IMG/VR virus record: IMGVR_UViG_3300032236_001850
Coordinates: 248,001 to 312,000 of that record
Direction: 5' to 3' (one strand)
DNA: 64,000 nt
In this document: positions 17,895 to 37,843 of the stretch, in pieces
Position numbering within the stretch: the stretch's first letter is position 1
Layout: each line of letters begins with the position of its first letter
Notes under the pieces: generated by a model
What the model was told of the DNA's origin: nothing
Database searches by the model: none
The model's input: only the letters and a program-made list of their open reading frames with translations
Made by a program: the position numbers and the translations under genes

Positions 17895-20800
17895 ATGGCA
17901 AATAAGGTAAAAATAGACTATTCTCAATTTAGAGCATCTGGTGTCTATACGCTTGAATTTGACGCATCACAAAACGTCATACTTACATCACAAACAATAA
18001 GACTGGTTATAGGTTTCTCAAATAAGGGACCTTTCAATACTCCTGTCTATATTCCTGATGCAACAACGATGATATCAATCTTTGGTGACATTGACGCGTC
18101 TCTTGAAAATAAAGGATCTTTCTTCCATAGATCAATATTAACCTGTTTAAATGCTGGACCAGTTTTCGCATTGAATCTTTTAAAATTGAACGATAATTTG
18201 GAAACTTCTGATCCTGATATGGTTACGTATAGATCTTTTTCGGTTGATACTGAGGAATACAATGGCGAAGTTACTAGTGAATTATACTCTTCCTATTACA
18301 ATAAGGAGAGATTCTGGTTTGCAGATCCTAATTATTTCTTAGCAACTTTAAGTTTTGCAGATCAGGGTAAATTACTAAGTTTAACTAATCTTGGTAAATC
18401 ACCTATGAGTTTAATAATCAGAAAATCTACTGATTCAACTACACCTCTACTTGGATATAATATATTTGCCATTGATTGGTATGGTGCTAACAATGTACCT
18501 ACATTTATGCACCCATATGATTATATAAGTGATTATTTTATAGATGTAATAGCAGTTTATGGTAATTGGACAAATTACCAAGCATTGTCTGTAGATCCAT
18601 ATTGGGGAGCTACTGGCCTTCAAATGTTTACTAATAATGGATTTGTAAAGAACAAAATAGATCAATTCCTTGCTAATCCAAATGTTTCAATAGTTACTTC
18701 TGTTACTGGATGTATCATCCCAGATTTTGTTGATCTTAATGGTGTTAATAAATACATTCAAACCCTTATAAATAACAATACAGCATCAACAGGTTTATTC
18801 TGTGCAATAGATGAACAAGCCTTTGATGATCTTTGTAACAATCCATATAGAATTGATCTTGTTGGAAATCACTTAATAGATGAACTTAGCGGTGATAGGG
18901 ATCTTCCAAATCCAAGAATAAATTTCTTAAGTTACGATCAGGCATTAGAGGCTGATTACCTATACACACAAAATGTAGTTGGTATAACCGGTGCTACTGG
19001 ATTTGTTAGTCCTGTTGGGGTTACCGGTTTTACAAAAGGTGCTAAGGTTGGTACTCTATTTACTATAGGTGGAGGAACAGGAGCTACTGCTGGTGTTTAT
19101 CAGGGATCCTTTGTTACTTATGATCCAAATGCATATGATACAGGTATGCATTATCTTTTAACTAAAAGTATTACTGGTACAACCGGAGGTATTTTACAAA
19201 ATGCTGCTCAGAAAGCTGCTCTTAAATCTTTCCTTAGCGTAACCTCATCCGATGACGAAAAATTCATTCTTGGAGTTGTACAGGGTGTAGCTGGTTTAAC
19301 CGGAGCTCTTATAAGTCAATTCAACGAAGCTGATATAGTAAAACTTAAAGTTACTGGAACTAAGGATGTTAGTGGGGAATTACTTATTTGGTGGACTCAT
19401 CCTCTAGATACTGCACAATACAGATCTCAAGGAGTTACTGTTAAACCTACATATAACTTATCAACATACAACACTGGTGCTTCTGGAAGTAATAAACCAT
19501 ATTATCCTAATTCCTATCAGTTTGGTAATTCTGATTATTTTGATATAATAAGTTTAGCAACACCAACTGGAGCTACTGGACCTGGTGCTCCTACTGGTTA
19601 TACAAATTCTGTTGTTGCTTATAATGCATCAACATTCTTTCAGAATCACAAATATAAGGAGATAGTTGATGGAGATTCTATTTGGATCACACCAACGGGT
19701 ACACCGTACGAACAATATCTTGGATTCCAGAATACTGTTGATAGAGATCAATTTGATCTTACATATGCTAGAGCATATTCACAACAAGGTACTCTTGATT
19801 CTAGTACGATAGTAAATATTGCAGATTTCGGTACATCTTATGCTTCTAATAATATAGGTCTTCCCGTAAGTGCACAAAAGCTTGATATAATTTCTCAAAT
19901 AGGTTCAATCAATCAATTTATAGATTGTACTAAATTAGATGTTAGTAAATTTACAATAAACACTGTTAATAACGTTTCACCTTTATCTGTGGGAGATTGG
20001 GTAGTTTCTACGGATCTTGATATATGTGTGCCAGCTAATGGTAATAGACAAAGTAGACTTACTAAAGTTAAATCTGTTGCACAAACAGGAACTCCTGGTT
20101 TATTGAAAGTTGAAACTACGAGACCAGTTTTATATTATTCTGGCGTTGGTGGTGCTCTTAGAGTACAAAAATTCAAATCAATACCACAGTTTACAACATC
20201 TTTTGATTTTACATTCCTTAAAGGATTTACAATGAAGGAAAGACATAGACCTAATGGAACTGACGCAAGATTAAATGAGATACTTAACGTTTTATATGAT
20301 ACAAATATTGCTAAGACACTTGCTTCTAAGGATGTAATCTCATTCAGATATATCGTGGATACTTTTAGTGGTATTATAGGACCAGAATCTAAATCACAAT
20401 ATAGTAGACTTGCAAAAATGAGACAGCAAGCTTTGGCTATTATAAATGCGCCATCTATGGCACAATTTAGAGCTAGTACTGATCCTAGATTTACTGATGC
20501 AGCTACTGCTTCTAATCCTTATCCTCCACTAAATACAGCTTATATTGCTGATGGTGGTAATCTTTCATTGAATCCATCATACACATTTAGTTTACCGACT
20601 GAGGAAGATGGATCTAAATTCTGTGCATTCTATTCTCCTTATATAGTTATAAGAAATGGTAATAAGAATCTTAGTGTTCCACCAGCTGCTTACGTTTCTA
20701 ACAATTTCATTAGAAAATTTGCAAACGGTGAACCATATGCTATCGTTGCTGGTCAGAAAAGAGGTATCATAAGCGGTGGTAATATAGTTGGTGTTGAATA

Positions 20801-21263
20801 TGACTTTACTAATGAGGATAGAGGAAATCTTGAACCTTTTGGTATCAATCCAATTATTAAAAGAAAAGGCATCGGTGTGGTTATATACGGTAACCAAACA
20901 GCTTATCAGCAAGTAAACTCAGCATTCAACCTAGTTCATGTTAGAGATTTGTTGATCAGTATTGAGAATGACGTTCAGGAGATATTAGCAAACTATCTTT
21001 TTGATTTCAATGAAGATTCAATAAGATTGGAGATTAAGACATTAGTTGATAACTATCTTGATGGAGTTAGATCAGGTGGTGGTATTTATGCTTACCAAAC
21101 GATAATGGACTCGTCAAATAACACTCCAGCTATTATAGACATGAATATGGGTATAATAGACATCATAATCGAACCTGCTAGAGGTATTCATAAATTCATC
21201 AATAGAATTACAGTTACCAGAACAGGTGGAATAGCTGCTGGAGGATTTATACAGTTCGTATAA
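17895..21263 (+). CDS. gp18: Contractile tail sheath protein (T4 gp18-like) with large insertion
   Basis: SGVYTLEFD, GFSNKGPFNTP, INPII, GNQT, NVRDL-like HVRDLL, FDFNE..IR, IEPARG. Confidence 0.92.
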   Translation: MANKVKIDYSQFRASGVYTLEFDASQNVILTSQTIRLVIGFSNKGPFNTPVYIPDATTMISIFGDIDASLENKGSFFHRSILTCLNAGPVFALNLLKLNDNLETSDPDMVTYRSFSVDTEEYNGEVTSELYSSYYNKERFWFADPNYFLATLSFADQGKLLSLTNLGKSPMSLIIRKSTDSTTPLLGYNIFAIDWYGANNVPTFMHPYDYISDYFIDVIAVYGNWTNYQALSVDPYWGATGLQMFTNNGFVKNKIDQFLANPNVSIVTSVTGCIIPDFVDLNGVNKYIQTLINNNTASTGLFCAIDEQAFDDLCNNPYRIDLVGNHLIDELSGDRDLPNPRINFLSYDQALEADYLYTQNVVGITGATGFVSPVGVTGFTKGAKVGTLFTIGGGTGATAGVYQGSFVTYDPNAYDTGMHYLLTKSITGTTGGILQNAAQKAALKSFLSVTSSDDEKFILGVVQGVAGLTGALISQFNEADIVKLKVTGTKDVSGELLIWWTHPLDTAQYRSQGVTVKPTYNLSTYNTGASGSNKPYYPNSYQFGNSDYFDIISLATPTGATGPGAPTGYTNSVVAYNASTFFQNHKYKEIVDGDSIWITPTGTPYEQYLGFQNTVDRDQFDLTYARAYSQQGTLDSSTIVNIADFGTSYASNNIGLPVSAQKLDIISQIGSINQFIDCTKLDVSKFTINTVNNVSPLSVGDWVVSTDLDICVPANGNRQSRLTKVKSVAQTGTPGLLKVETTRPVLYYSGVGGALRVQKFKSIPQFTTSFDFTFLKGFTMKERHRPNGTDARLNEILNVLYDTNIAKTLASKDVISFRYIVDTFSGIIGPESKSQYSRLAKMRQQALAIINAPSMAQFRASTDPRFTDAATASNPYPPLNTAYIADGGNLSLNPSYTFSLPTEEDGSKFCAFYSPYIVIRNGNKNLSVPPAAYVSNNFIRKFANGEPYAIVAGQKRGIISGGNIVGVEYDFTNEDRGNLEPFGINPIIKRKGIGVVIYGNQTAYQQVNSAFNLVHVRDLLISIENDVQEILANYLFDFNEDSIRLEIKTLVDNYLDGVRSGGGIYAYQTIMDSSNNTPAIIDMNMGIIDIIIEPARGIHKFINRITVTRTGGIAAGGFIQFV

Positions 21264-21303: not shown

Positions 21304-21858
21304 ATGGCAGGACTATCACATTATCAAAACTCACTATCAGCAATAAACAAGTATGAACCTGTTTATCTGAACCAATTTGAAGTAACAATAATACCTCCAG
21401 CTGCTGTGGCAGGGGGTAGTATTTTGTTACAGCACGTTAGCAAAGTTAATGGACTTTCGTTAGATAAAAATCCAGGAACAGTTCAACAAAAATATAAATT
21501 TGCTAAAAGGAATTATGCGGGATCAAAGCCTGAAAATACCTTTATGGATCTTAGTATCACTTTCAGTGTCAACCTTAATGATGCGAATTCAATGTACGTT
21601 TTTAAAACATTAAGACAGTGGTCTGATTTGATCTATAATCCATTAACTGGAGCAATGGGTCTAAAAAACGATTACACAGGAAGTATAATCATCTCTGTTT
21701 TTAATAAAGCTGGTGACGTTTATAGAAGAATAACATGTAAAGATACGTTTCCGACTAAACCTATCTCGCCAATGAACTTGAACTATACAAGTACTGATCT
21801 ATATAAAATAGATGATATGGTGTTTGCGGTTGATTATTGGGACGATCTATTCCTATAA
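21304..21858 (+). CDS. gp19: Tail tube protein, copy 1 (T4 gp19-like)
   Basis: Follows sheath; EPVYLNQFEV...WSDLIYNP.TG.MG...DY...FP pattern. Confidence 0.85.
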   Translation: MAGLSHYQNSLSAINKYEPVYLNQFEVTIIPPAAVAGGSILLQHVSKVNGLSLDKNPGTVQQKYKFAKRNYAGSKPENTFMDLSITFSVNLNDANSMYVFKTLRQWSDLIYNPLTGAMGLKNDYTGSIIISVFNKAGDVYRRITCKDTFPTKPISPMNLNYTSTDLYKIDDMVFAVDYWDDLFL

Positions 21859-21872
21859 AATAAAAAACATAA

Positions 21873-22448
21873 ATGGCTGGATTACCACATTTTACAAATT
21901 CTCTTGCAGGTATAAATAATTTTGAGCCTGTATACCTTAATCAGTTTGAGGTACTGATAAGCCCACCTGCTGCTATTGTTTCAGCAAGTACGACTTTCCA
22001 TGGTGAGAGTATATTAACTCAACAGGCTAAATCCATAACTGGATTAGCTGTTGATATTGCTCCAGCACAAACGGTAAACCAAAACTATAAGTTTGCAACT
22101 AGAAGATATGCTGGGGGTGAACCTCAAACGAGTGATATGAATTTAACCATTGAATTCGAGGTTAACCTTAACAAGTCAAATTCTATGGAACTTTATAAAA
22201 TTCTTAGACAATGGTCTGATTTGATCTATAATCCATTAACTGGAGCAATGGGTCTAAAAAACGATTATGTTGGTTCCATACTTATCTCAATATTCAACAA
22301 ACAAGGGGACGTTTTCAGAAGAATAAGAATTCCTTCGTGTTTTATAAGTGAACCTATAAACGCTATGGATCTTGATTACGAAACTCCTGCTATCTATACT
22401 ATAAGAACTTCGTGGGTCTGTGATTATTGGGAAGATCTATTCCTATAA
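21873..22448 (+). CDS. gp19: Tail tube protein, copy 2 (paralogue)
   Basis: Same motifs as copy 1; 56-bp identical tract shared. Confidence 0.85.
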   Translation: MAGLPHFTNSLAGINNFEPVYLNQFEVLISPPAAIVSASTTFHGESILTQQAKSITGLAVDIAPAQTVNQNYKFATRRYAGGEPQTSDMNLTIEFEVNLNKSNSMELYKILRQWSDLIYNPLTGAMGLKNDYVGSILISIFNKQGDVFRRIRIPSCFISEPINAMDLDYETPAIYTIRTSWVCDYWEDLFL

Positions 22449-30798: not shown

Positions 30799-30806
30799 GA
30801 TATATA
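30799..30806 (+). promoter_or_regulatory. Putative late promoter GATATATA (second copy AATATATA at 30766)
   Basis: About 22 nt upstream of ATG 30829. Confidence 0.6.
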
Positions 30807-30828
30807 ATCAATAAAAAAAAAGTAAACC

Positions 30829-33402
30829 ATGGACTTTATAAATCAAGTTAAAAAAGTAAAAGAATCAACAAAATCTCCTGAGGTGAAGGCTTTATGTGAA
30901 AGTTACCTTAGTGGTGGTACAGTTTCTAGAGAGAAATTAGTACTTTTGATTAGTGAGAATAACGCATCCGTGGAATCAGATAATACTGGAAATAACATAC
31001 AAAATCATATGGATTTAATAAAAAGAGAAGAGTCGGAGATCTCTAAAAAAGCTGCTGCTTCCCTAATGGAATCATGGGGAGGATTAGGAAAATCTACAAC
31101 AGGTAGTAATTCTGGATCTTATAACGGTAAACCGAATGAGACCAAAAATGATGAAAACTCTCTTTATGAAAGTATTAGTAGTTTAGAATCTTTAGATCCT
31201 GCTGCAAAATCATTTATTGAAACACAGAGTATCAAAAATCTTGGTGTTAGAGGTGCTATAGAGAAAATAAAAGAATCTTCAATATACACATATCCTAAAG
31301 CAAAAATGGTTTGCGAACAATATCAGTACCTTTTGGAAAACAAAGGCATTCCTGAATTTTCACTTATTCATAATTTTGTAAATGAACTTGCTTCATTTTC
31401 TTGGGATTCTTCAATAGCTCCTATTGCTGAGGAACTTAAGGAAAAAACTAAAAAATTATCTAGAGAAATAGAGGTTGCTAAAGTTTTAGAATCTATTAAA
31501 GGAAGCGGAAGCTCTTCATTCTACTCTGAACTTTCTGATACCCTTAATACCTGGTTGGTTTCTGAGAGCAAATCTAATGGATTGTTAATTAGAAACATCT
31601 CTAAGTATTCATTTAACCCAGTAGTAAAAAATCTTATTAATTTCTTAAATATTCAAGAAAGTACAGATAGTAGAAAATTAGAGGTTCCTGTTAATGTACA
31701 AGGTGAATCTACGGTTTCTAAAGTTTATTCTCCCGTTCTTTTTGAAGGTGGAAGAACATTCTTCTTTATTGGCGGATGTATATTCGAAGCAACTTCAAAT
31801 TCATTAAGAAAGTTAGCAAAATCTGAGTATTCTGCTTTATCAGAAGGTTATTTAAGACTTTCTTTAACTACAATGAAACCACACGTTAAAATAAACGAAT
31901 CTGGTATTTCTGTTAAACTGGGTAACAAGATAGTTACTATGGTTGAAGAAAATGATAAAGTTTCTGTTTATCTTGGAAAAGATAAACTTAGATTTGGTGA
32001 CACAATAGGTTTAGCTAAGATCGTTGGTCTTGAATCCTCATCATATTTCGGAGTTAATGAATCTGAGGCTGTTGATGATATCATGACACTTTATACAAAC
32101 TATTCAAATGTTGTTGAATTGGATTTCGCTAAATCGATAACTTCCAATGTTTATGAAGGACTTGCTATTAATCTTTTCAAATGGAATGGACAAATTTATC
32201 TTCAGAAGATAAACGAGGCTATGAGAGAAAATTCACTTTATGAAGTTAATGGATCTCAAGCAGTTGCGATGGTTAAAAACTTTATGAGATATGATATATC
32301 TGAGGGATTAACAGAATTCTTAGAAGGTGAATCTAGAATTAAATCAGTAATGATTAATGATAGAAACAAGGTTCTTGAAAATATTTCTAAGATAGAAGGA
32401 GAAATCAATAAGGTTGAATCTCTTATGGAATCAAATCCATTATACAAAAACTCTAAGGAAATAAGAGTTGCTCATTCTATGTTGGAAAAAGAATTACAAT
32501 CGCTTAAAACTAAATGGAATCAAATAAACATAGAAATCCAAAAAATTGAGGAAGATATAGAGCTTCAGCCAAATCCGGATTTATTTGAGGATCAAAAATT
32601 CAATATTGGTTCTTTTGTGAAAGTTAAAGAATCTGGGGAAACTGGTAAAGTTATCTCTATAGATGGATCATCGGGAAGATACACAGTTCTTTTAGACAGC
32701 GGTAAAACTGCTGATCATCAAATAAACGAGCTTGCTGATTTAGACGAGGCTTTAAACAAAGCTGCTGATGATAATGCAGAATCTGCTGAGGATAACAATG
32801 ATGATGCTGGAGAAGTTAAAGAATCAAACAACCTTAATAAATCTCAGCTTCCTATAGGAGAGCAAAAGAAAATGCTTAAAAAACTTGCAGGAATGCACGG
32901 ATTCTCAAAAGCACCTGGTGCTAATAACGAGAAAATAGATATGGACGGTGATTCATTACATGGATACAACAGAACAATGAACGAGGGTAAAGCTGATCTT
33001 AAGAACGGAACACCTAAAACTAATTATTCTAAAGCTCCTGGTAACGATAAAAAAGCTCCCGCTTCAACTCCTAAAAATAAAACATTAGCAAGTGCTCCTA
33101 ATAAAAAAGGAAATTCTAAGCTTACTAAAGGAACAACAGATCCTAATTTTTCTGATGCTCCTGGTGATGATGTATTAGGCAAAGGTAAAAATGCAAATCC
33201 AAAAAAGAGTTTAGCTGTTGCTCCTGGTGATGGTGCTAGAATAAAAGCTAAAGAATACGGTAAGGATAAACTTAGAGAAGCACCAGATGATAAAAACGGT
33301 GATTTAAGATTTGACGTTTCTGGAGTTAGAGATGAAAAAGAGTACAAAGCTGGATACAATCTTAAGGATCTTAAAGAATCTGAAGAAGTAAAAAAAAACT
33401 AA
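30829..33402 (+). CDS. Large putative head/core protein with coiled coil, KOW/SH3-like module and KAPG-repeat tail
   Basis: FNIGSFVKVKESGETGKVISID..GRYTVLL; repeated (K/S/D)AP(G) motifs; ends at A-AAA-AAC-TAA. Confidence 0.65.
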   Translation: MDFINQVKKVKESTKSPEVKALCESYLSGGTVSREKLVLLISENNASVESDNTGNNIQNHMDLIKREESEISKKAAASLMESWGGLGKSTTGSNSGSYNGKPNETKNDENSLYESISSLESLDPAAKSFIETQSIKNLGVRGAIEKIKESSIYTYPKAKMVCEQYQYLLENKGIPEFSLIHNFVNELASFSWDSSIAPIAEELKEKTKKLSREIEVAKVLESIKGSGSSSFYSELSDTLNTWLVSESKSNGLLIRNISKYSFNPVVKNLINFLNIQESTDSRKLEVPVNVQGESTVSKVYSPVLFEGGRTFFFIGGCIFEATSNSLRKLAKSEYSALSEGYLRLSLTTMKPHVKINESGISVKLGNKIVTMVEENDKVSVYLGKDKLRFGDTIGLAKIVGLESSSYFGVNESEAVDDIMTLYTNYSNVVELDFAKSITSNVYEGLAINLFKWNGQIYLQKINEAMRENSLYEVNGSQAVAMVKNFMRYDISEGLTEFLEGESRIKSVMINDRNKVLENISKIEGEINKVESLMESNPLYKNSKEIRVAHSMLEKELQSLKTKWNQINIEIQKIEEDIELQPNPDLFEDQKFNIGSFVKVKESGETGKVISIDGSSGRYTVLLDSGKTADHQINELADLDEALNKAADDNAESAEDNNDDAGEVKESNNLNKSQLPIGEQKKMLKKLAGMHGFSKAPGANNEKIDMDGDSLHGYNRTMNEGKADLKNGTPKTNYSKAPGNDKKAPASTPKNKTLASAPNKKGNSKLTKGTTDPNFSDAPGDDVLGKGKNANPKKSLAVAPGDGARIKAKEYGKDKLREAPDDKNGDLRFDVSGVRDEKEYKAGYNLKDLKESEEVKKN

Positions 33403-33560
33403 GCCGCAACTTCTATTTCGCTCCTAAGGGCGAGAATCAGGATAAACCTGGACAACCATTCGTTCAATCGATGAAGGGAAAATTCGCTAAAGCACCCACG
33501 GGTAAGGACACCAATCCCAAGGATGAGGAGGAAGATGATTCAGGCGAAAAGAAACAATAA
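33399..33560 (+). CDS. Putative -1 frameshift extension of the 857-aa protein (53 aa)
   Basis: -1 frame reads LSRNFYFAPKGENQDKPGQPFVQSMKGKFAKAPTGKDTNPKDEEEDDSGEKKQ*, continuing the KAP motifs. Confidence 0.55.
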   Translation, partial: LSRNFYFAPKGENQDKPGQPFVQSMKGKFAKAPTGKDTNPKDEEEDDSGEKKQ

Positions 33561-33566
33561 TTTATA

Positions 33567-33600
33567 AGAATGTAGTATTTTTTACTACATTCTTTTTTTA
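33567..33600 (+). terminator. Intrinsic terminator
   Basis: AAGAATGTAGTA-ttttt-TACTACATTCTT plus T-run, placed just after the -1 frame stop. Confidence 0.8.
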
Positions 33601-33605
33601 TGAAT

Positions 33606-34027: not shown

Positions 34028-34513
34028 ATGACTGATATTAAAAAGATAAAACCTAACGGTGAATATAAATCTGGTAAATATGATCCAAAAAATCCAGAAA
34101 AGTATATAGGCGATATCCATAATATCATATACAGATCATCATGGGAATATAGATTCTGTACATATTGTGACACTAATGAAGCAATATTAAAATGGAGTTC
34201 TGAACCCGTGGTTATACCATATTATAATCCTCTTGATAAAAAAGACCATAATTATAATGTCGATTTCTATATTAAGGTTTTGAAAGAAGATAATAGTGAG
34301 CAGGAATGGATCATAGAGATAAAACCTGAAAAACAAACGGTTAAACCTATAATGGAAGGGGTTGTAACGATGGCTAAATTGAAATCCTATAATAGAAATA
34401 TGCAAATATGGATAACAAATCAAGCTAAATTTAAAGCAGCCAAGGAATGGGCTGATAAAAGAGGATATAGATTTGGTGTTATCGATGAAAACTTCCTATT
34501 CAAGAGCAGATAA
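34028..34513 (+). CDS. gp4: Head completion nuclease (T4 gp4-like, TnsA N-terminal fold)
   Basis: KYIGD..NIIYRSSWE...WSSE...IPY...DFYI...IEIKP...NQAKF.AA. Confidence 0.85.
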   Translation: MTDIKKIKPNGEYKSGKYDPKNPEKYIGDIHNIIYRSSWEYRFCTYCDTNEAILKWSSEPVVIPYYNPLDKKDHNYNVDFYIKVLKEDNSEQEWIIEIKPEKQTVKPIMEGVVTMAKLKSYNRNMQIWITNQAKFKAAKEWADKRGYRFGVIDENFLFKSR

Positions 34514-34551: not shown

Positions 34552-36186
34552 ATGGCAGGTTTTGTAGATAATAATAAACCATCAGAGTCACCGGTTATAC
34601 AGAGGATAAGGGAATCAGTTAAAAAATTGAGTACCTTTGGTATGAAGTATGATGACATGGTAATAAGAAATTCGCAAGCTGTCGGTGTAACTGAAGCTGC
34701 ATTTCTTAACAAGAATAAAGCTAACGTTGAAGACGAAAGCATGCTATGGTCTCTAGCCAAGCAGGATATTACATCCAGACAATTCATAGGTTACTTTGAC
34801 AAGGATTATAAGGGAAAAAGAGATTTTCTAAGAATGTTTTCTTTGAATCCTGAAGTTGAATGGGTTCTTGATACCATTTGTGACGAGGCTATAACATATG
34901 ATCCAGCAAACTTTTTTGCGTACCCAGATTTTATAGATCTTTCCGATGTAAACGAAAAGGTAAAAGACGAGCTTTATGACGTTTATAAGAACCTATACGA
35001 TATATGGGGATTCTCCGATGATATAACAGCATGGCAATATTTTAGACAGTTTATAATTGATGGATTTCTAGCTTTTGAAATTGTTTACGATGACAGCGGA
35101 AAAAATATAGTTGGCTTCAAGGAACTTGATCCTATAACATTAATTCCTAGCGTTGAAAAACAACTTGATGGAAGTTTTGTTAGTACATGGACACAATATC
35201 CGCAAGATCCTAAAAAGAAGCGTACTCTCTACGATCCACAAATAATCTATATCTCATATGCTAAGGGTAACTCCATATCGAGAGTTAGTTACATTGAAAG
35301 ATTAATAAGACCTTATAATATATTAAGAATTATAGAATATACTAGGGTTATATGGTCTGTAATGAACGCTTCATTCAAATTGAAAATGACCGTTCCAATT
35401 GGTACCAAATCTCAACAGAAAGGCATGCAAACTCTGGGTGAACTTATGAGTGTATATAAGGAGGACATACAACTTAATGATGAGAGTGGTGAACTTACAG
35501 TTGATGGTAGACCTAAGATTCAATTTTATAAAAATTACCTTATGCCATCAGGTGTTAATGGTACACCAACAATAGAACCAATTAATACGGAGGGACCTAA
35601 TCTTAACGATCCAGCTCCTCTTACATATTTCTTTGATAAATTCATACTTGAATCTAAGGTTCCACCTTCAAGATTTCATAACCCAGATGGTGGTAGCACT
35701 TCACCATATTCAAATGGAGCTGAAGGTCTAGATAAAGAGGAGATAAGATTTTATAAATTTATTTCTAGACTGAGATCAGTGTTTCAGGAGATATTGGTTA
35801 AACCTATGTGGATACAAATGGTTAAAAAATATCCTCATTTAGAAAAGGATTTTCTTTTCAAAAGTCAACTTGGACTTAATTATTGGTCTGATAATCCATT
35901 TAAGGAAAATCAGGAAATTGGTAAAATGACTCAAAGAAAAGAAACAATTACCGGTCTTGGTGCTCTTATGAACGATGACGGTAAACCTTTCTTCTCGAAT
36001 GCTTTTCTTATAGAGGAATTTTTAGGTATGTCTAAACAAGACATAGCAGCAAACAAAGAGGCTAAAGAAAGAAAAATAAAGGAAAAAGCAGCAGCTGAGA
36101 AAAAAGCAGCAGGAGCAACTGGAGCAGCAGGCGGCGGGGGTAAAAAAGAAGGCGGTGAAGAAAAACCACCACAAGTAACACTATAG
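34552..36186 (+). CDS. gp20: Portal vertex protein, copy 1 (T4 gp20-like)
   Basis: FRQFIIDG, ELDP, SYIERLIRPYN.LRI.E...VIW, KNYLMP, EEIRF.KFI.RLR. Confidence 0.9.
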   Translation: MAGFVDNNKPSESPVIQRIRESVKKLSTFGMKYDDMVIRNSQAVGVTEAAFLNKNKANVEDESMLWSLAKQDITSRQFIGYFDKDYKGKRDFLRMFSLNPEVEWVLDTICDEAITYDPANFFAYPDFIDLSDVNEKVKDELYDVYKNLYDIWGFSDDITAWQYFRQFIIDGFLAFEIVYDDSGKNIVGFKELDPITLIPSVEKQLDGSFVSTWTQYPQDPKKKRTLYDPQIIYISYAKGNSISRVSYIERLIRPYNILRIIEYTRVIWSVMNASFKLKMTVPIGTKSQQKGMQTLGELMSVYKEDIQLNDESGELTVDGRPKIQFYKNYLMPSGVNGTPTIEPINTEGPNLNDPAPLTYFFDKFILESKVPPSRFHNPDGGSTSPYSNGAEGLDKEEIRFYKFISRLRSVFQEILVKPMWIQMVKKYPHLEKDFLFKSQLGLNYWSDNPFKENQEIGKMTQRKETITGLGALMNDDGKPFFSNAFLIEEFLGMSKQDIAANKEAKERKIKEKAAAEKKAAGATGAAGGGGKKEGGEEKPPQVTL

Positions 36187-36190
36187 TAAC

Positions 36191-37843
36191 ATGGCAGGAT
36201 TTTTAGACTTTTTAAAACCCAATCAAGCAGCTTTGGGTAACATACTTAAAAATTTGGGTAGCATATCCAAATTTGGTATGCAGTACGATGACATGGTTGT
36301 TAGAAATTCGCAGGCTATTGGTAGAACCGAGGGTGCTTTTTTCAATCAGGAAGGAACAGGATATACTAAGGATAGCGCATTTCAATGGACAGCTTCGTAT
36401 CATGACACTAAGGTAAGAAAATACATAGCTTATTTTGATAAATCATATGGAGAAAAAAGAGATTATTTAAGAAAGTTTTCCATAAATGGTGAGATAGAAT
36501 TCATACTGGATATCATAACAGATGAGGCCATAGTATATGACGATAGAAACTATTTTGCGCAGCCTTCATTTTCCAATCTTGATCTTAAGGACAAAGTTAA
36601 GGAGAGGGTAAGCACACATTTCAATAGACTTTATAATATATTTCAGTTCCAGAATACAGTATTGGGCTGGCAATATTTCAGACAATTTATAATAGATGGA
36701 TTCTTGGCTTTTGAGATAATCTATGATAATAAGGGAAAGGAGATAATAGGATTCAAGGAACTTGATGCTATTTCTTTACAACCAACGGTAGAAAAAGTTG
36801 GTGAAAATGAATATAAGCAGTTCTGGATACAATATCCAAGTAATCCACAAATGTTTAGAAAACTTACTAATGAACAAGTTATCTACATATCATATGCGAA
36901 GGGTAATACTATATCAAGAACAAGTTACGTTGAAAGACTTGTAAGATCTTATAACATTCTAAGAATTATGGAGAATTCTAGAGTTATCTGGAACGTAATG
37001 AATGCCAGTTATAGAATGAAATTCATAATTCCCATAGGAACACAGTCTCCACAAAAAGCCATGCAAACTTTGGGACAACTTATGTCCAACTATAAGGAAG
37101 AGATTAGCATAAATGATTCATCCGGAGAATTAACAGTAAACGGTAGACCTAAGGTTCAATTCTATAAGAATTATTTATTTCCCGAACAGAATGGAGTTTC
37201 ACCAGAGATATCTTCTCTGAATCCAGCTGGACCTGATTTCAATGTTATGGATAATGTTCTTTATTTCTTCAATAAATTAAAAATGGATTCTAAAATCCCA
37301 TATGCTAGATTTGCTGCAAAAAATGGAACACCTGCTAATTACCAAATAGCAATAGATCAGCTTGAAAGAGATGAAATAAGATTCGAAAAGTTTCTAAGAA
37401 GACTTCGTTCAATATTCCAGGAAATCCTGGTTAAACCACTCTATATACAAATGTGTTTGGAATACCCAGAATTGGCTAAAGATAGAAATTTTAAAACCAA
37501 CATAGGTTTAAATTTTAATAGAGATCTTGAATTCGAGGATCAGGTTGAAATGACTAATCTTAAAAAGAAAAGTGAATTTGTAACTGCTCTTTCAGATTTA
37601 AAGGTAAAAGCTGGGGAGGAGGATGTACCTTATTTCGATAATGACTTTCTGATACAGAGATTTTTAGGTATGTCTCCTGATCAATTGAAATTGAACGAGG
37701 AATACAAGAAAAAAGAGGAAAAAGCCGGAGCTGCACCTCCTGCTGCTGGCGGAGAATCAGCACCCGCTGCCGGATCGGCTGCTCCCGCGGGAGAAACCCC
37801 ACCAGCAGGTGGCGAAGCAAAAGCACCACAGGTAACACTATAA
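36191..37843 (+). CDS. gp20: Portal vertex protein, copy 2 (paralogue)
   Basis: Same motifs: FRQFIIDG, SYVERLVRSYN, KNYLFP, DEIRFEKFLRRLR. Confidence 0.9.
   Translation: MAGFLDFLKPNQAALGNILKNLGSISKFGMQYDDMVVRNSQAIGRTEGAFFNQEGTGYTKDSAFQWTASYHDTKVRKYIAYFDKSYGEKRDYLRKFSINGEIEFILDIITDEAIVYDDRNYFAQPSFSNLDLKDKVKERVSTHFNRLYNIFQFQNTVLGWQYFRQFIIDGFLAFEIIYDNKGKEIIGFKELDAISLQPTVEKVGENEYKQFWIQYPSNPQMFRKLTNEQVIYISYAKGNTISRTSYVERLVRSYNILRIMENSRVIWNVMNASYRMKFIIPIGTQSPQKAMQTLGQLMSNYKEEISINDSSGELTVNGRPKVQFYKNYLFPEQNGVSPEISSLNPAGPDFNVMDNVLYFFNKLKMDSKIPYARFAAKNGTPANYQIAIDQLERDEIRFEKFLRRLRSIFQEILVKPLYIQMCLEYPELAKDRNFKTNIGLNFNRDLEFEDQVEMTNLKKKSEFVTALSDLKVKAGEEDVPYFDNDFLIQRFLGMSPDQLKLNEEYKKKEEKAGAAPPAAGGESAPAAGSAAPAGETPPAGGEAKAPQVTL

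What the first reader, a model, noticed from the sequence alone, without database searches (positions are those of the whole stretch)
33388..33560. Candidate programmed -1 frameshift at A-AAA-AAC immediately before a stop
Seen: the 857-aa ORF ends GTA AAA AAA AAC TAA. The -1 frame stays open for 53 codons (LSRNFYFAPKGENQDKPGQPFVQSMKGKFAKAPTGK...), continues the protein's own KAP(G/T) motifs, and ends just before the terminator at 33567. A hairpin TCGCTC-ctaa-GGGCGA lies at 33418-33433, further downstream than the usual 5-9 nt. Known: A-AAA-AAC fits the X-XXY-YYZ slippery pattern. Inference: two C-terminal isoforms of a head/core protein.
Basis: partly seen in the sequence, partly recalled or inferred. 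Interest (0 to 1): 0.68.

Follow-up and report, generated by a model that had tools for sequence, protein, structure and literature searches.

The report
Conserved A9 slippage site, huge phage
A run of nine A's at the end of a large late gene of a 434-kb phage is kept unchanged in all its relatives, and it most likely lets a fraction of the protein carry a conserved 53-residue tail read from the -1 frame, through slipping by the RNA polymerase or the ribosome.

Summary
ORF 30829-33402 (857 aa) ends GTA AAA AAA AAC TAA, and the -1 frame stays open for 53 codons to 33560.

This is not chance or a homopolymer error. Across 46 distinct junction sequences from relatives (40-88% protein identity), the run is A9 in 44 and A10 in 2. 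A stop follows directly in 41. The -1 ORF (50-60 codons) is conserved at the amino-acid level. A pattern scan found 56 of 56 metagenomic contigs with exactly A9. One derived subclade has the tail in frame or as a separate small ORF, and it still keeps A9.

Two C-terminal isoforms are therefore well supported (about 0.9). The mechanism is open:
- I favour transcriptional slippage at A9 (about 0.55). Nine A's are conserved where a heptamer needs only six. The genome purges A9 or longer from coding sequence (1 observed, 26.6 expected). No stimulatory RNA structure is conserved.
- Ribosomal -1 frameshifting at A_AAA_AAC is the close rival (about 0.35).

"Head/core protein" is untested. The protein is an orphan family behind a late-type promoter, with a disordered motif-rich tail. 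RNA reads could not be obtained.

The parts
30799..30807 (+). GATATATAA, a T4-late-like promoter motif 21 nt before the start codon
   Evidence: Conserved upstream of the gene in relatives. The motif GATATATA[AG] occurs 67 times in the 434-kb genome, and 54 copies have an ORF of 50 aa or more starting within 80 nt, including the tail sheath gene. Position read.
30813..30821 (+). A9 run in the 5' leader, 7 nt before the ATG. Its length varies among relatives.
   Evidence: Relatives have A7, A8, A9 or A10 here, or no run. This serves as an internal control for the invariant run at the 3' end.
30829..33402 (+). Main ORF, 857 aa (short isoform). It has a helical N-terminal region, a beta-rich domain, a long helical hairpin, a small SH3/KOW-like domain and a disordered motif-rich tail (about residue 651-857).
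   Evidence: AlphaFold model (pLDDT 66.5 overall; central domain 90.3 when folded alone). 291 homologues. No family assignment.
33390..33398 (+). A9 tract, the proposed slippage site. It starts at codon position 3 of GTA.
   Evidence: The run is A9 in 44 and A10 in 2 of 46 distinct relatives. The three synonymous positions inside the run are A in 41 of 41, while neighbouring third positions have a consensus of 0.37-0.85. 56 of 56 contigs have A9. It is the only sense-strand A9 or longer in 220 long ORFs of the genome, against 26.6 expected.
33393..33399 (+). A_AAA_AAC, an in-phase X_XXY_YYZ heptamer embedded in the run (site of the rival ribosomal mechanism)
   Evidence: The last base is C in 34 and G in 7 of the 41 canonical relatives.
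33400..33402 (+). TAA stop of the short isoform, directly after the run
   Evidence: A stop (TAA or TAG) is at this position in 41 of 46 distinct relatives.
33399..33560 (+). -1 frame extension: 53 codons plus TAA. It carries two more hydrophobic-x-x-A-P motifs and an acidic end.
   Evidence: It is conserved at 50-60 codons in relatives, with motifs (F/W)xFAP and (S/A)(K/V)AP(T/D)GK. Third codon positions vary most. It is in frame in three diverged relatives and a stand-alone 73-aa ORF in L041-L043.
33416..33435 (+). It is present in this genome but not conserved, and probably has no role.
33566..33601 (+). Intrinsic terminator (12-pair stem, T-run), placed after the extension rather than after the 0-frame stop
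   Evidence: A comparable hairpin plus T-run lies 25-55 nt after the extension's stop in 34 of 46 distinct relatives, with different stem sequences.

Best explanation
The 857-aa late gene is decoded into two proteins.

Most transcripts carry A9 and give the 857-residue form that ends ...EEVKKN. The run of nine A's (nine T's in the template) fills the RNA-DNA hybrid of the bacterial RNA polymerase, which this phage redirects with its own sigma factors. A fraction of transcripts therefore gains one extra A. Ordinary translation of those A10 mRNAs runs past the stop into the -1 frame. It yields a form of about 910 residues, ...EEVKKK-LSRNFYFAPK...KAPTGK...acidic end.

The extension adds two more copies of the hydrophobic-x-x-A-P motif that is already repeated in the disordered tail, plus an acidic C-terminus. 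The two isoforms therefore differ in the number of motifs and in their C-terminal end.

**Shown:** the run, the stop, the frame arrangement and the extension peptide are under purifying selection across the family.

**Inferred:** the slipping machine is the polymerase, the ratio of isoforms, and what the tail binds.

The general claim (two isoforms by recoding at the run) has about 0.9 confidence. The figure given here is for the transcriptional mechanism specifically.
For: 1. **Run length.** The conserved feature is the length of the run, not the heptamer. It is A9 in 44 and A10 in 2 of 46 distinct junctions spanning 40-88% protein identity. All three synonymous sites in the run are A in 41 of 41, while third positions of the five preceding codons have a consensus of only 0.37-0.85.
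2. **Known threshold.** Nine A's or T's is the length at which bacterial RNA polymerase slips efficiently in vivo, and the length used by Thermus dnaX (PMC5009743). A conserved A9 plus a conserved ORF arrangement in non-identical homologues is the published criterion for functional slippage (PMC1088944).
3. **Genome-wide avoidance.** The genome avoids such runs in a length-dependent way. In 220 long ORFs, sense-strand runs of A9 or longer number 1 (this site) against 26.6 +/- 3.9 in codon-usage-preserving shuffles. For A8 or longer the figures are 12 against 71, and for A7 or longer 139 against 189. Only 7 A/T runs of 9 or more exist in 434.5 kb.
4. **No stimulator.** No conserved RNA structure or SD-like element flanks the site.
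5. **Last base.** It is C in 34 of 41. In E. coli, A_AAA_AAC is much less shift-prone than A_AAA_AAG (PMC5009743). The phage carries both tRNA-Lys(UUU) and tRNA-Lys(CUU).
6. **Run kept in other arrangements.** A9 is kept when the phase or arrangement changes. In L020 the run starts at codon position 2. Three diverged in-frame relatives keep A9, with a -1-frame stop 2-4 codons later. The stand-alone ORF of L041 also keeps it.
7. **Host polymerase.** The phage encodes sigma factors, including a gp55-like late sigma next door, so a bacterial multisubunit polymerase transcribes the gene.
8. **Internal control.** The leader A-run of the same gene varies from A7 to A10 among relatives, whereas the 3' run does not.
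Against:
- Any A9 run also contains an in-phase slippery heptamer, so every comparative observation is also compatible with ribosomal -1 frameshifting.
- A9 followed by C would additionally let E-, P- and A-site tRNAs all re-pair in the -1 frame. This is my inference and could explain nine A's on a ribosomal model.
- The stop directly after the run (41 of 46) is a classical helper of ribosomal shifts and has no role in polymerase slippage.
- Programmed polymerase slippage was listed only for RNA viruses in the 2016 review, so the prior for a dsDNA phage is low. -1 frameshifting is common in phage late genes.
- The purge of long A runs could also reflect replication slippage or ribosome sliding.
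Confidence: 0.55

Rival explanations
1. Programmed ribosomal -1 frameshifting at A_AAA_AAC (33393-33399). tRNA-Lys and tRNA-Asn slip back one base, helped by the stop codon waiting directly downstream and possibly by E-site re-pairing on the extended run. The product is ...KKN-LSRNFYF...
For: - A perfect in-phase heptamer is present in all canonical relatives.
- A 0-frame stop is immediately 3' in 41 of 46.
- IS1 uses A_AAA_AAC with no established stimulator (PMC4066793).
- -1 frameshifts that add C-terminal extensions are well known in phage late genes, such as T7 gene 10 (PMC5009743).
- Seven relatives have the highly shifty A_AAA_AAG.
Against: - It does not by itself explain why three extra A's 5' of the heptamer are invariant at synonymous sites.
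- No stimulatory structure is conserved.
- C as the last base is weak for bacterial ribosomes in E. coli tests.
- At A9 a bacterial polymerase is expected to slip anyway, so a purely ribosomal mechanism would need that slippage to be suppressed.
Confidence: 0.35
2. Homopolymer sequencing or assembly error. The true gene has A10 (or A7) and is one continuous ORF of about 910 codons.
For: A9 runs are error-prone on some platforms. Three relatives do have the tail in frame.
Against: - 44 of 46 distinct junctions from independent metagenomes have A9, and 41 of them also have the stop directly after the run.
- 56 of 56 contigs matched a pattern that allowed A8-A11, and all had A9.
- An independent ENA assembly at 99% identity calls the same 857-aa ORF.
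- The only in-frame proteins among 5.8 billion are one subclade, which is in frame through an extra C (CCCC against CCC) and still has A9.
Confidence: 0.01
3. The -1 ORF is an independent small gene, or a decaying remnant of a once-fused tail, and is not joined to the 857-aa protein.
For: In L041-L043 the peptide is a separate 73-aa ORF with its own ATG. So it may be able to act in trans.
Against: - In the window the -1 frame is closed by TGA five codons before the run, with no start codon. The only ATG (33471) is not conserved.
- The conserved peptide starts right at the run.
- Purifying selection at 40% overall divergence excludes a remnant.
- The split form is in a derived clade.
Confidence: 0.03
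4. DNA-level phase variation. Replication slippage at A9 creates A10 sub-populations of genomes that make only the long form.
For: Long A/T runs are mutable, and the genome avoids them.
Against: All consensus assemblies are A9. No A10 lineage is fixed anywhere outside the two A10 variants, which also keep the out-of-frame arrangement. Replication slippage rates are too low to supply a structural or stoichiometric isoform in every burst (established knowledge).
Confidence: 0.03

Closest known systems
Thermus thermophilus dnaX (tau/gamma) by transcriptional slippage at A9
   Same: An uninterrupted run of nine A's inside a gene. Slippage by a bacterial multisubunit RNA polymerase gives two C-terminally different products from one gene, with nearby stops in the alternative frames (PMC5009743). 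The in-frame relatives here (A9 followed by a -1-frame stop after 2-4 codons) have exactly that layout.
   Different: In the window the default product is the short one and slippage gives the long one. The gene is a phage late gene of unknown function. Slippage here is inferred and not measured.
IS1 insAB' and E. coli dnaX: ribosomal -1 frameshifting at A_AAA_AAC / A_AAA_AAG
   Same: The same slippery heptamer. IS1 has no established stimulator (PMC4066793). Both give two products in a set ratio.
   Different: Those sites have six A's and are not extended to nine. dnaX has an SD-like element and a stem-loop. Here nine A's are invariant and no flanking element is conserved.
Phage T7 gene 10A/10B and lambda-type tail chaperone G/GT frameshifts
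   Same: A phage late gene in which a minority of molecules receives a C-terminal extension from the -1 frame. In T7 gene 10 this happens near the end of the ORF (PMC5009743; details of sizes are from my own knowledge).
   Different: The shift sites differ (G_GUU_UUC and G_GGA_AAG against a homopolymer). The protein is not a capsid protein or tail chaperone by any search. Its gene is not between tail tube and tape measure.
Shigella mxiE (T9), Citrobacter tssM (A-run) and IS elements with A9: productive transcriptional slippage in bacteria
   Same: Conserved homopolymer of 9 or more at the ORF overlap, with the fused product made by standard translation of slipped mRNA (PMC1088944; PMC4256274, listed).
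   Different: Those are cellular or mobile-element genes. I found no described case in a dsDNA phage.

Membership tests
Programmed -1 ribosomal frameshift site | In-phase X_XXY_YYZ slippery heptamer at the ORF overlap | tested here: met
   A_AAA_AAC at 33393-33399. A_AAA_AA(C/G/A) is present in all relatives. However, any A9 run contains one.
Programmed -1 ribosomal frameshift site | Stimulatory element: a downstream stem-loop or pseudoknot 5-9 nt away, or an upstream SD-like sequence, conserved among relatives | tested here: not met
   The hairpin is 16-18 nt away with z = -0.9. RNAalifold predicts 0 consensus pairs. 67.1% of cells are paired against 66.0% in shuffles. Upstream GAGG is not conserved. 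An adjacent stop codon is conserved and could act as a weak stimulator.
Programmed -1 ribosomal frameshift site | Conserved, coding -1 ORF downstream | tested here: met
   The ORF is 50-60 codons in all relatives. Codon-position differences are 0.345/0.289/0.574.
Programmed -1 ribosomal frameshift site | Trans-frame product made from a homogeneous mRNA | not testable with these tools
   This needs in vitro translation or MS of the junction peptide.
Programmed transcriptional slippage (bacterial RNA polymerase) | Uninterrupted A or T run of about 9 or more in the transcribed gene | tested here: met
   A9 at 33390-33398. The threshold is from PMC5009743.
Programmed transcriptional slippage (bacterial RNA polymerase) | Run length and ORF organisation conserved in non-identical homologues (criterion of Baranov et al. 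2005) | tested here: met
   44 of 46 have A9 and 2 of 46 have A10. 41 have the same stop and -1 ORF layout. 56 of 56 contigs have A9. The criterion was read.
Programmed transcriptional slippage (bacterial RNA polymerase) | Such runs are selected against elsewhere in the genome's coding sequence | tested here: met
   1 observed against 26.6 +/- 3.9 expected for A9 or longer. Run-count ratios fall from about 0.4 to 0.2 at length 8 and 0.09 at length 9.
Programmed transcriptional slippage (bacterial RNA polymerase) | Heterogeneous run length in mRNA but not in DNA | not testable with these tools
   There is no PHROG or Pfam family and no PDB sequence match. Foldseek and VIA-align give only generic helical-hairpin and small beta-barrel matches. 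BFVD hits are uncharacterised proteins. Virion data are not available.

The most novel reading that the evidence does not exclude
A whole clade of uncultivated huge phages uses programmed transcriptional slippage by the host RNA polymerase at an invariant A9 tract to set the ratio of two isoforms of a late protein. Some lineages have evolutionarily flipped which isoform is the default, as in dnaX. As far as the literature searched here shows, this would be the first programmed polymerase-slippage site described in a dsDNA phage.
Probability: 0.5. Interest if true: 0.75.

Novelty: new member of a known kind. Interest (0 to 1): 0.6.

Why it matters
- **Annotation.** Gene callers truncate this gene in every one of several hundred metagenomic contigs and leave a 160-nt "intergenic" gap that actually codes for a conserved peptide. 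Recognising the site corrects the annotation of a widespread huge-phage family.
- **A natural experiment on recoding.** The same A9 tract is kept while the arrangement changes: tail out of frame, tail in frame, or tail on its own ORF. This argues that the ratio of two products is the selected trait.
- **A possible new class of phage recoding.** If the polymerase is the slipping machine, homopolymer scans, not only heptamer scans, become relevant for finding phage recoding. That matters especially in AT-rich genomes that otherwise purge such runs.
- **A handle on function.** The conserved 53-residue peptide with two hydrophobic-x-x-A-P motifs gives a defined tool (pull-downs, deletions) for studying an orphan late protein.

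Tried and rejected
- **DNA similarity to known phages.** None found. By protein, only Lak megaphages and one 462-kb uncultured phage match residues of about 170-563 at 23-25% identity. Their homologues have no A-run, no disordered tail and no extension, so the site is specific to the closer family.
- **Function of the 857-aa protein.**
  - PHROGs gives nothing. Pfam gives only a sub-threshold MSSS SH3-like hit at 593-626.
  - A PDB profile search gives nothing.
  - Foldseek against PDB has no E-value of 0.001 or better.
  - VIA-align gives only generic coiled-coil hairpins (Z about 10) for 500-583. The central domain folded alone (pLDDT 90) reaches at most Z 6.2.
  - ESM Atlas returns "hypothetical protein".
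- **Does the extension dock on the folded body (residues 110-650)?** One complex-prediction job gave no verdict, which is neither support nor evidence against.
Rejected.
- **Read-through of TAA or a +1 shift.** Rejected. Those frames are short and not conserved (20-36 and 1-14 codons in the canonical loci).
- **Search for fused A10 versions.** The region search of the in-frame tail found only the three known in-frame clusters. That search sees only proteins of 0.55-1.75 times 876 aa, so short stand-alone ORFs or fragments would be missed.
- **The idea that the GYN(L/I)xE repeats are T4-type prohead-protease sites.** Considered, but I found no way to test it here, so it is not claimed.
- **L040's in-frame TAG.** No alternative genetic code was applied to it.
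Full report
**Observation.** The window is part of a single 434,509-bp contig (window = bases 248001-312000) with 35% GC and 31 tRNA genes. It carries T4-like late functions:
- tail sheath and two tail-tube paralogues;
- a sigma factor and a gp55-like late sigma;
- a gp4-like head-completion protein;
- two portal paralogues, a ligase and a clamp loader.

It is a huge phage. ORF 30829-33402 (857 aa) ends GTA AAA AAA AAC TAA, with an A9 run at 33390-33398. From 33399 the -1 frame is open for 53 codons, ending 6 nt before a strong terminator hairpin at 33566-33594. The -1 frame is closed by TGA five codons before the run and has no start codon there. The +1 frame closes after 8 codons and read-through after 23.

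**Is it more than chance or error?** A protein search gave 291 homologues. Of the 120 listed, nearly all end in (E/D)(V/L)KKN or KKK followed by a stop, whatever their length (723-988 aa).

I fetched 80 of 171 matching loci from IMG/VR. I located the junction in 75, which gave 46 distinct junction sequences spanning 40-88% protein identity:
- The run is A9 in 44 and A10 in 2.
- In 41 the layout is the same as in the window: the run starts at codon position 3, then C (34) or G (7), then TAA or TAG.
- The three synonymous positions inside the run are A in 41 of 41. Third positions of the five preceding codons have a consensus frequency of only 0.37-0.85.
- The -1 ORF is 50-60 codons everywhere, with a conserved peptide: LSRNFYFAPK..QNKPG..FV.S..GKLSKAPTGK plus an acidic end. 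The distant clade has ILSKVW(A/S)FAPTG...MSVAPDGK.
- Pairwise differences by codon position are 0.345/0.289/0.574, as expected for a frame that is translated.
- In the canonical loci the +1 frame is 1-14 codons and read-through is 20-36 codons, and neither is conserved.

A pattern allowing A8 to A11 before the conserved downstream sequence matched 32 viral and 24 metagenomic contigs. All 56 have A9, in 37 distinct contexts. An independent ENA assembly at 99% identity calls the same 857-aa ORF. The flanking genes are in the same order wherever a locus reaches them (74 of 80 for each immediate neighbour). In 34 of 46 distinct loci a hairpin plus T-run follows the stop of the extension, not the 0-frame stop, and the stem sequences differ between loci. 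A homopolymer error is excluded, and the extension is a translated, selected part of the gene.

**Informative variants.** One derived clade (100% SH-aLRT in a quick ML tree; A9+CTAA lies on both sides of the deepest split) has rearranged the junction in four ways:
- L020/L054 have A9 followed by CCC. The run starts at codon position 2 and the 0-frame stop is 14 codons later. A -1 change is still needed.
- L029 has A10 followed by GCT TAA.
- P0096, P0070 and P0099 are three diverged sequences from NCBI, Logan and ENA. They have A9 followed by CCCC or CCCT, which puts the tail in frame. The -1 frame then stops after 2-4 codons.
- In L041-L043 the main ORF ends earlier. The tail, still preceded by ...NEENADVKKN and an in-frame A9, is a stand-alone 73-aa ORF with its own ATG.

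These in-frame proteins are the only ones among 5.8 billion with the tail in frame (only proteins of 0.55-1.75 times the query length are seen). The run is therefore kept whether slippage would lengthen or shorten the product. This argues that producing two forms is the selected trait, as in dnaX.

**Mechanism.** Two known mechanisms fit: -1 ribosomal frameshifting on the embedded A_AAA_AAC, and transcriptional slippage that adds one A.

*For the polymerase:*
- Nine A's are conserved where six suffice for the heptamer.
- Nine is the length at which bacterial RNA polymerase slips efficiently in vivo and which Thermus dnaX exploits (PMC5009743).
- The case meets the published comparative criterion for functional slippage (PMC1088944).
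- The phage encodes sigma factors, so a bacterial polymerase transcribes the gene.
- The genome purges long A runs from coding sequence in a length-dependent way. Sense-strand counts in 220 long ORFs are 139 against 189 for A7 or longer, 12 against 71 for A8 or longer, and 1 against 26.6 +/- 3.9 for A9 or longer. The single A9 is this site.
- The window has 3 A9 runs against 16.2 expected. The whole genome has 7 A/T runs of 9 or more.
- No RNA structure or SD-like element is conserved.
- The commonest last base, C, is a poor one for bacterial ribosomes in E. coli tests.
- A9 survives a change of phase in L020.
- The variable leader run of the same gene (A7-A10, or no run, among relatives) shows that A-runs in this lineage drift when they are not constrained.

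*For the ribosome:*
- The heptamer is always in phase, but any A9 contains one.
- The stop directly after it is conserved, a classical aid to shifting.
- IS1 uses A_AAA_AAC without a known stimulator (PMC4066793).
- -1 shifts are common in phage late genes.
- A9 followed by C would let three tRNAs re-pair (my inference).

I put transcriptional slippage at about 0.55 and ribosomal frameshifting at about 0.35. The two are not mutually exclusive. The RNA-read test could not be run.

**What the protein is.** No family could be assigned.

The AlphaFold model shows:
- a helical N-terminal region (1-277);
- a beta-rich domain (295-473; pLDDT 90 when folded alone);
- a long helical hairpin (491-575);
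- a small SH3/KOW-like barrel (596-637; weak Pfam MSSS hit);
- a disordered tail from about 651.

Fold searches give only generic matches. The best viral matches are uncharacterised proteins of uncultured myoviruses and of Tenacibaculum phages, which hints at a Bacteroidota-phage lineage, as do the weak Lak matches.

The tail has a variable number of repeats with hydrophobic-x-x-A-P-(G) and GYN(L/I)xE motifs.

Hints to a late, possibly envelope-directed role are:
- a conserved GATATATAA motif 21 nt before the ATG, which precedes 54 ORFs in the genome including the sheath gene;
- one subclade has one or two PG_binding_1 domains inserted in the N-terminal disordered loop.

'Head/core protein' remains a guess. 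A complex prediction of the extension against the folded body gave no verdict.

**Comparison and novelty.** The site works like known recoding sites that give two C-terminal isoforms: dnaX, IS1, T7 gene 10 and the phage G/GT chaperones. It is a new member of that kind, in an orphan gene of an uncultivated huge-phage clade. I found no description of it. The 2016 review lists viral polymerase slippage only for RNA viruses. If the polymerase mechanism is confirmed, it would be a first for dsDNA phages.

**Caveats.**
- All evidence is comparative. No transcript or protein data were available.
- The tree is a quick search with midpoint rooting.
- L040, rows under 600 aa and loci whose ORF ran off the contig were left out of it.

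Noticed in passing
window 34552-36186 and 36191-37843: Two adjacent portal-protein paralogues (544 and 550 aa) both match phrog_213 (E 3.5e-55 and 5.1e-68). A duplicated portal gene is unusual for a tailed phage.
   Followed up: no
window 21304-21858 and 21873-22448: Two adjacent tail-tube-like paralogues (184 and 191 aa, phrog_32623/3629) lie directly after a 1122-aa tail sheath gene (17895-21263).
   Followed up: no
window 30799-30821 and genome-wide (G000): The motif GATATATA[AG] resembles the T4 late promoter TATAAATA. It occurs 67 times, and 54 copies have an ORF start within 80 nt. In many cases the ATG is only 3 nt after the motif, which suggests leaderless or near-leaderless late mRNAs. 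Two leaders carry A9-A10 runs right after the motif: this gene, and a 108-aa ORF at genome position about 236353-236362 on the minus strand. That is a possible setting for reiterative transcription.
   Followed up: partly
L040, codon 254 of the homologous gene (IMGVR_UViG_3300009184_000053): An in-frame TAG interrupts the homologue, with 676 further open codons behind it. It could be a sequencing error, a pseudogene or stop-codon reassignment in that phage. I did not apply another code.
   Followed up: no
G000:C1:316913-319294 (about 5 kb beyond the window's end): A 793-aa ORF carries about nine tandem 23-residue repeats (DLGVPNRIYPAPGGDEYPTSPGP). The next ORF looks like a gp5/VgrG-type hub N-terminus. 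It is the only other protein in the genome with six hydrophobic-x-x-A-P-G motifs.
   Followed up: partly
P0096, P0070, P0115 (relatives L038-L043), residues about 121-172: A subclade of the family has one or two PG_binding_1 (PF01471) domains inserted in the loop that is disordered in the window's protein. This suggests contact with the cell wall at some stage.
   Followed up: partly
G000:C1:210278-228985 (outside the window): A cluster of 31 tRNA genes includes both tRNA-Lys(UUU) and tRNA-Lys(CUU) and two tRNA-Asn(GUU). These are the tRNAs that decode the slippery run.
   Followed up: no
window 34028-34513: The gp4-like head-completion protein also matches endonuclease PHROGs. Its homologues carry PF08722 (Tn7 TnsA-like N-terminal endonuclease fold) in the precomputed tables.
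   Followed up: no
L005-L033 and others, between the gp4-like gene and the portal gene: In most relatives the portal match starts about 600 nt after the gp4-like gene, whereas in the window the gap is 39 nt. This could be an extra small gene or a diverged portal N-terminus in those phages.
   Followed up: no
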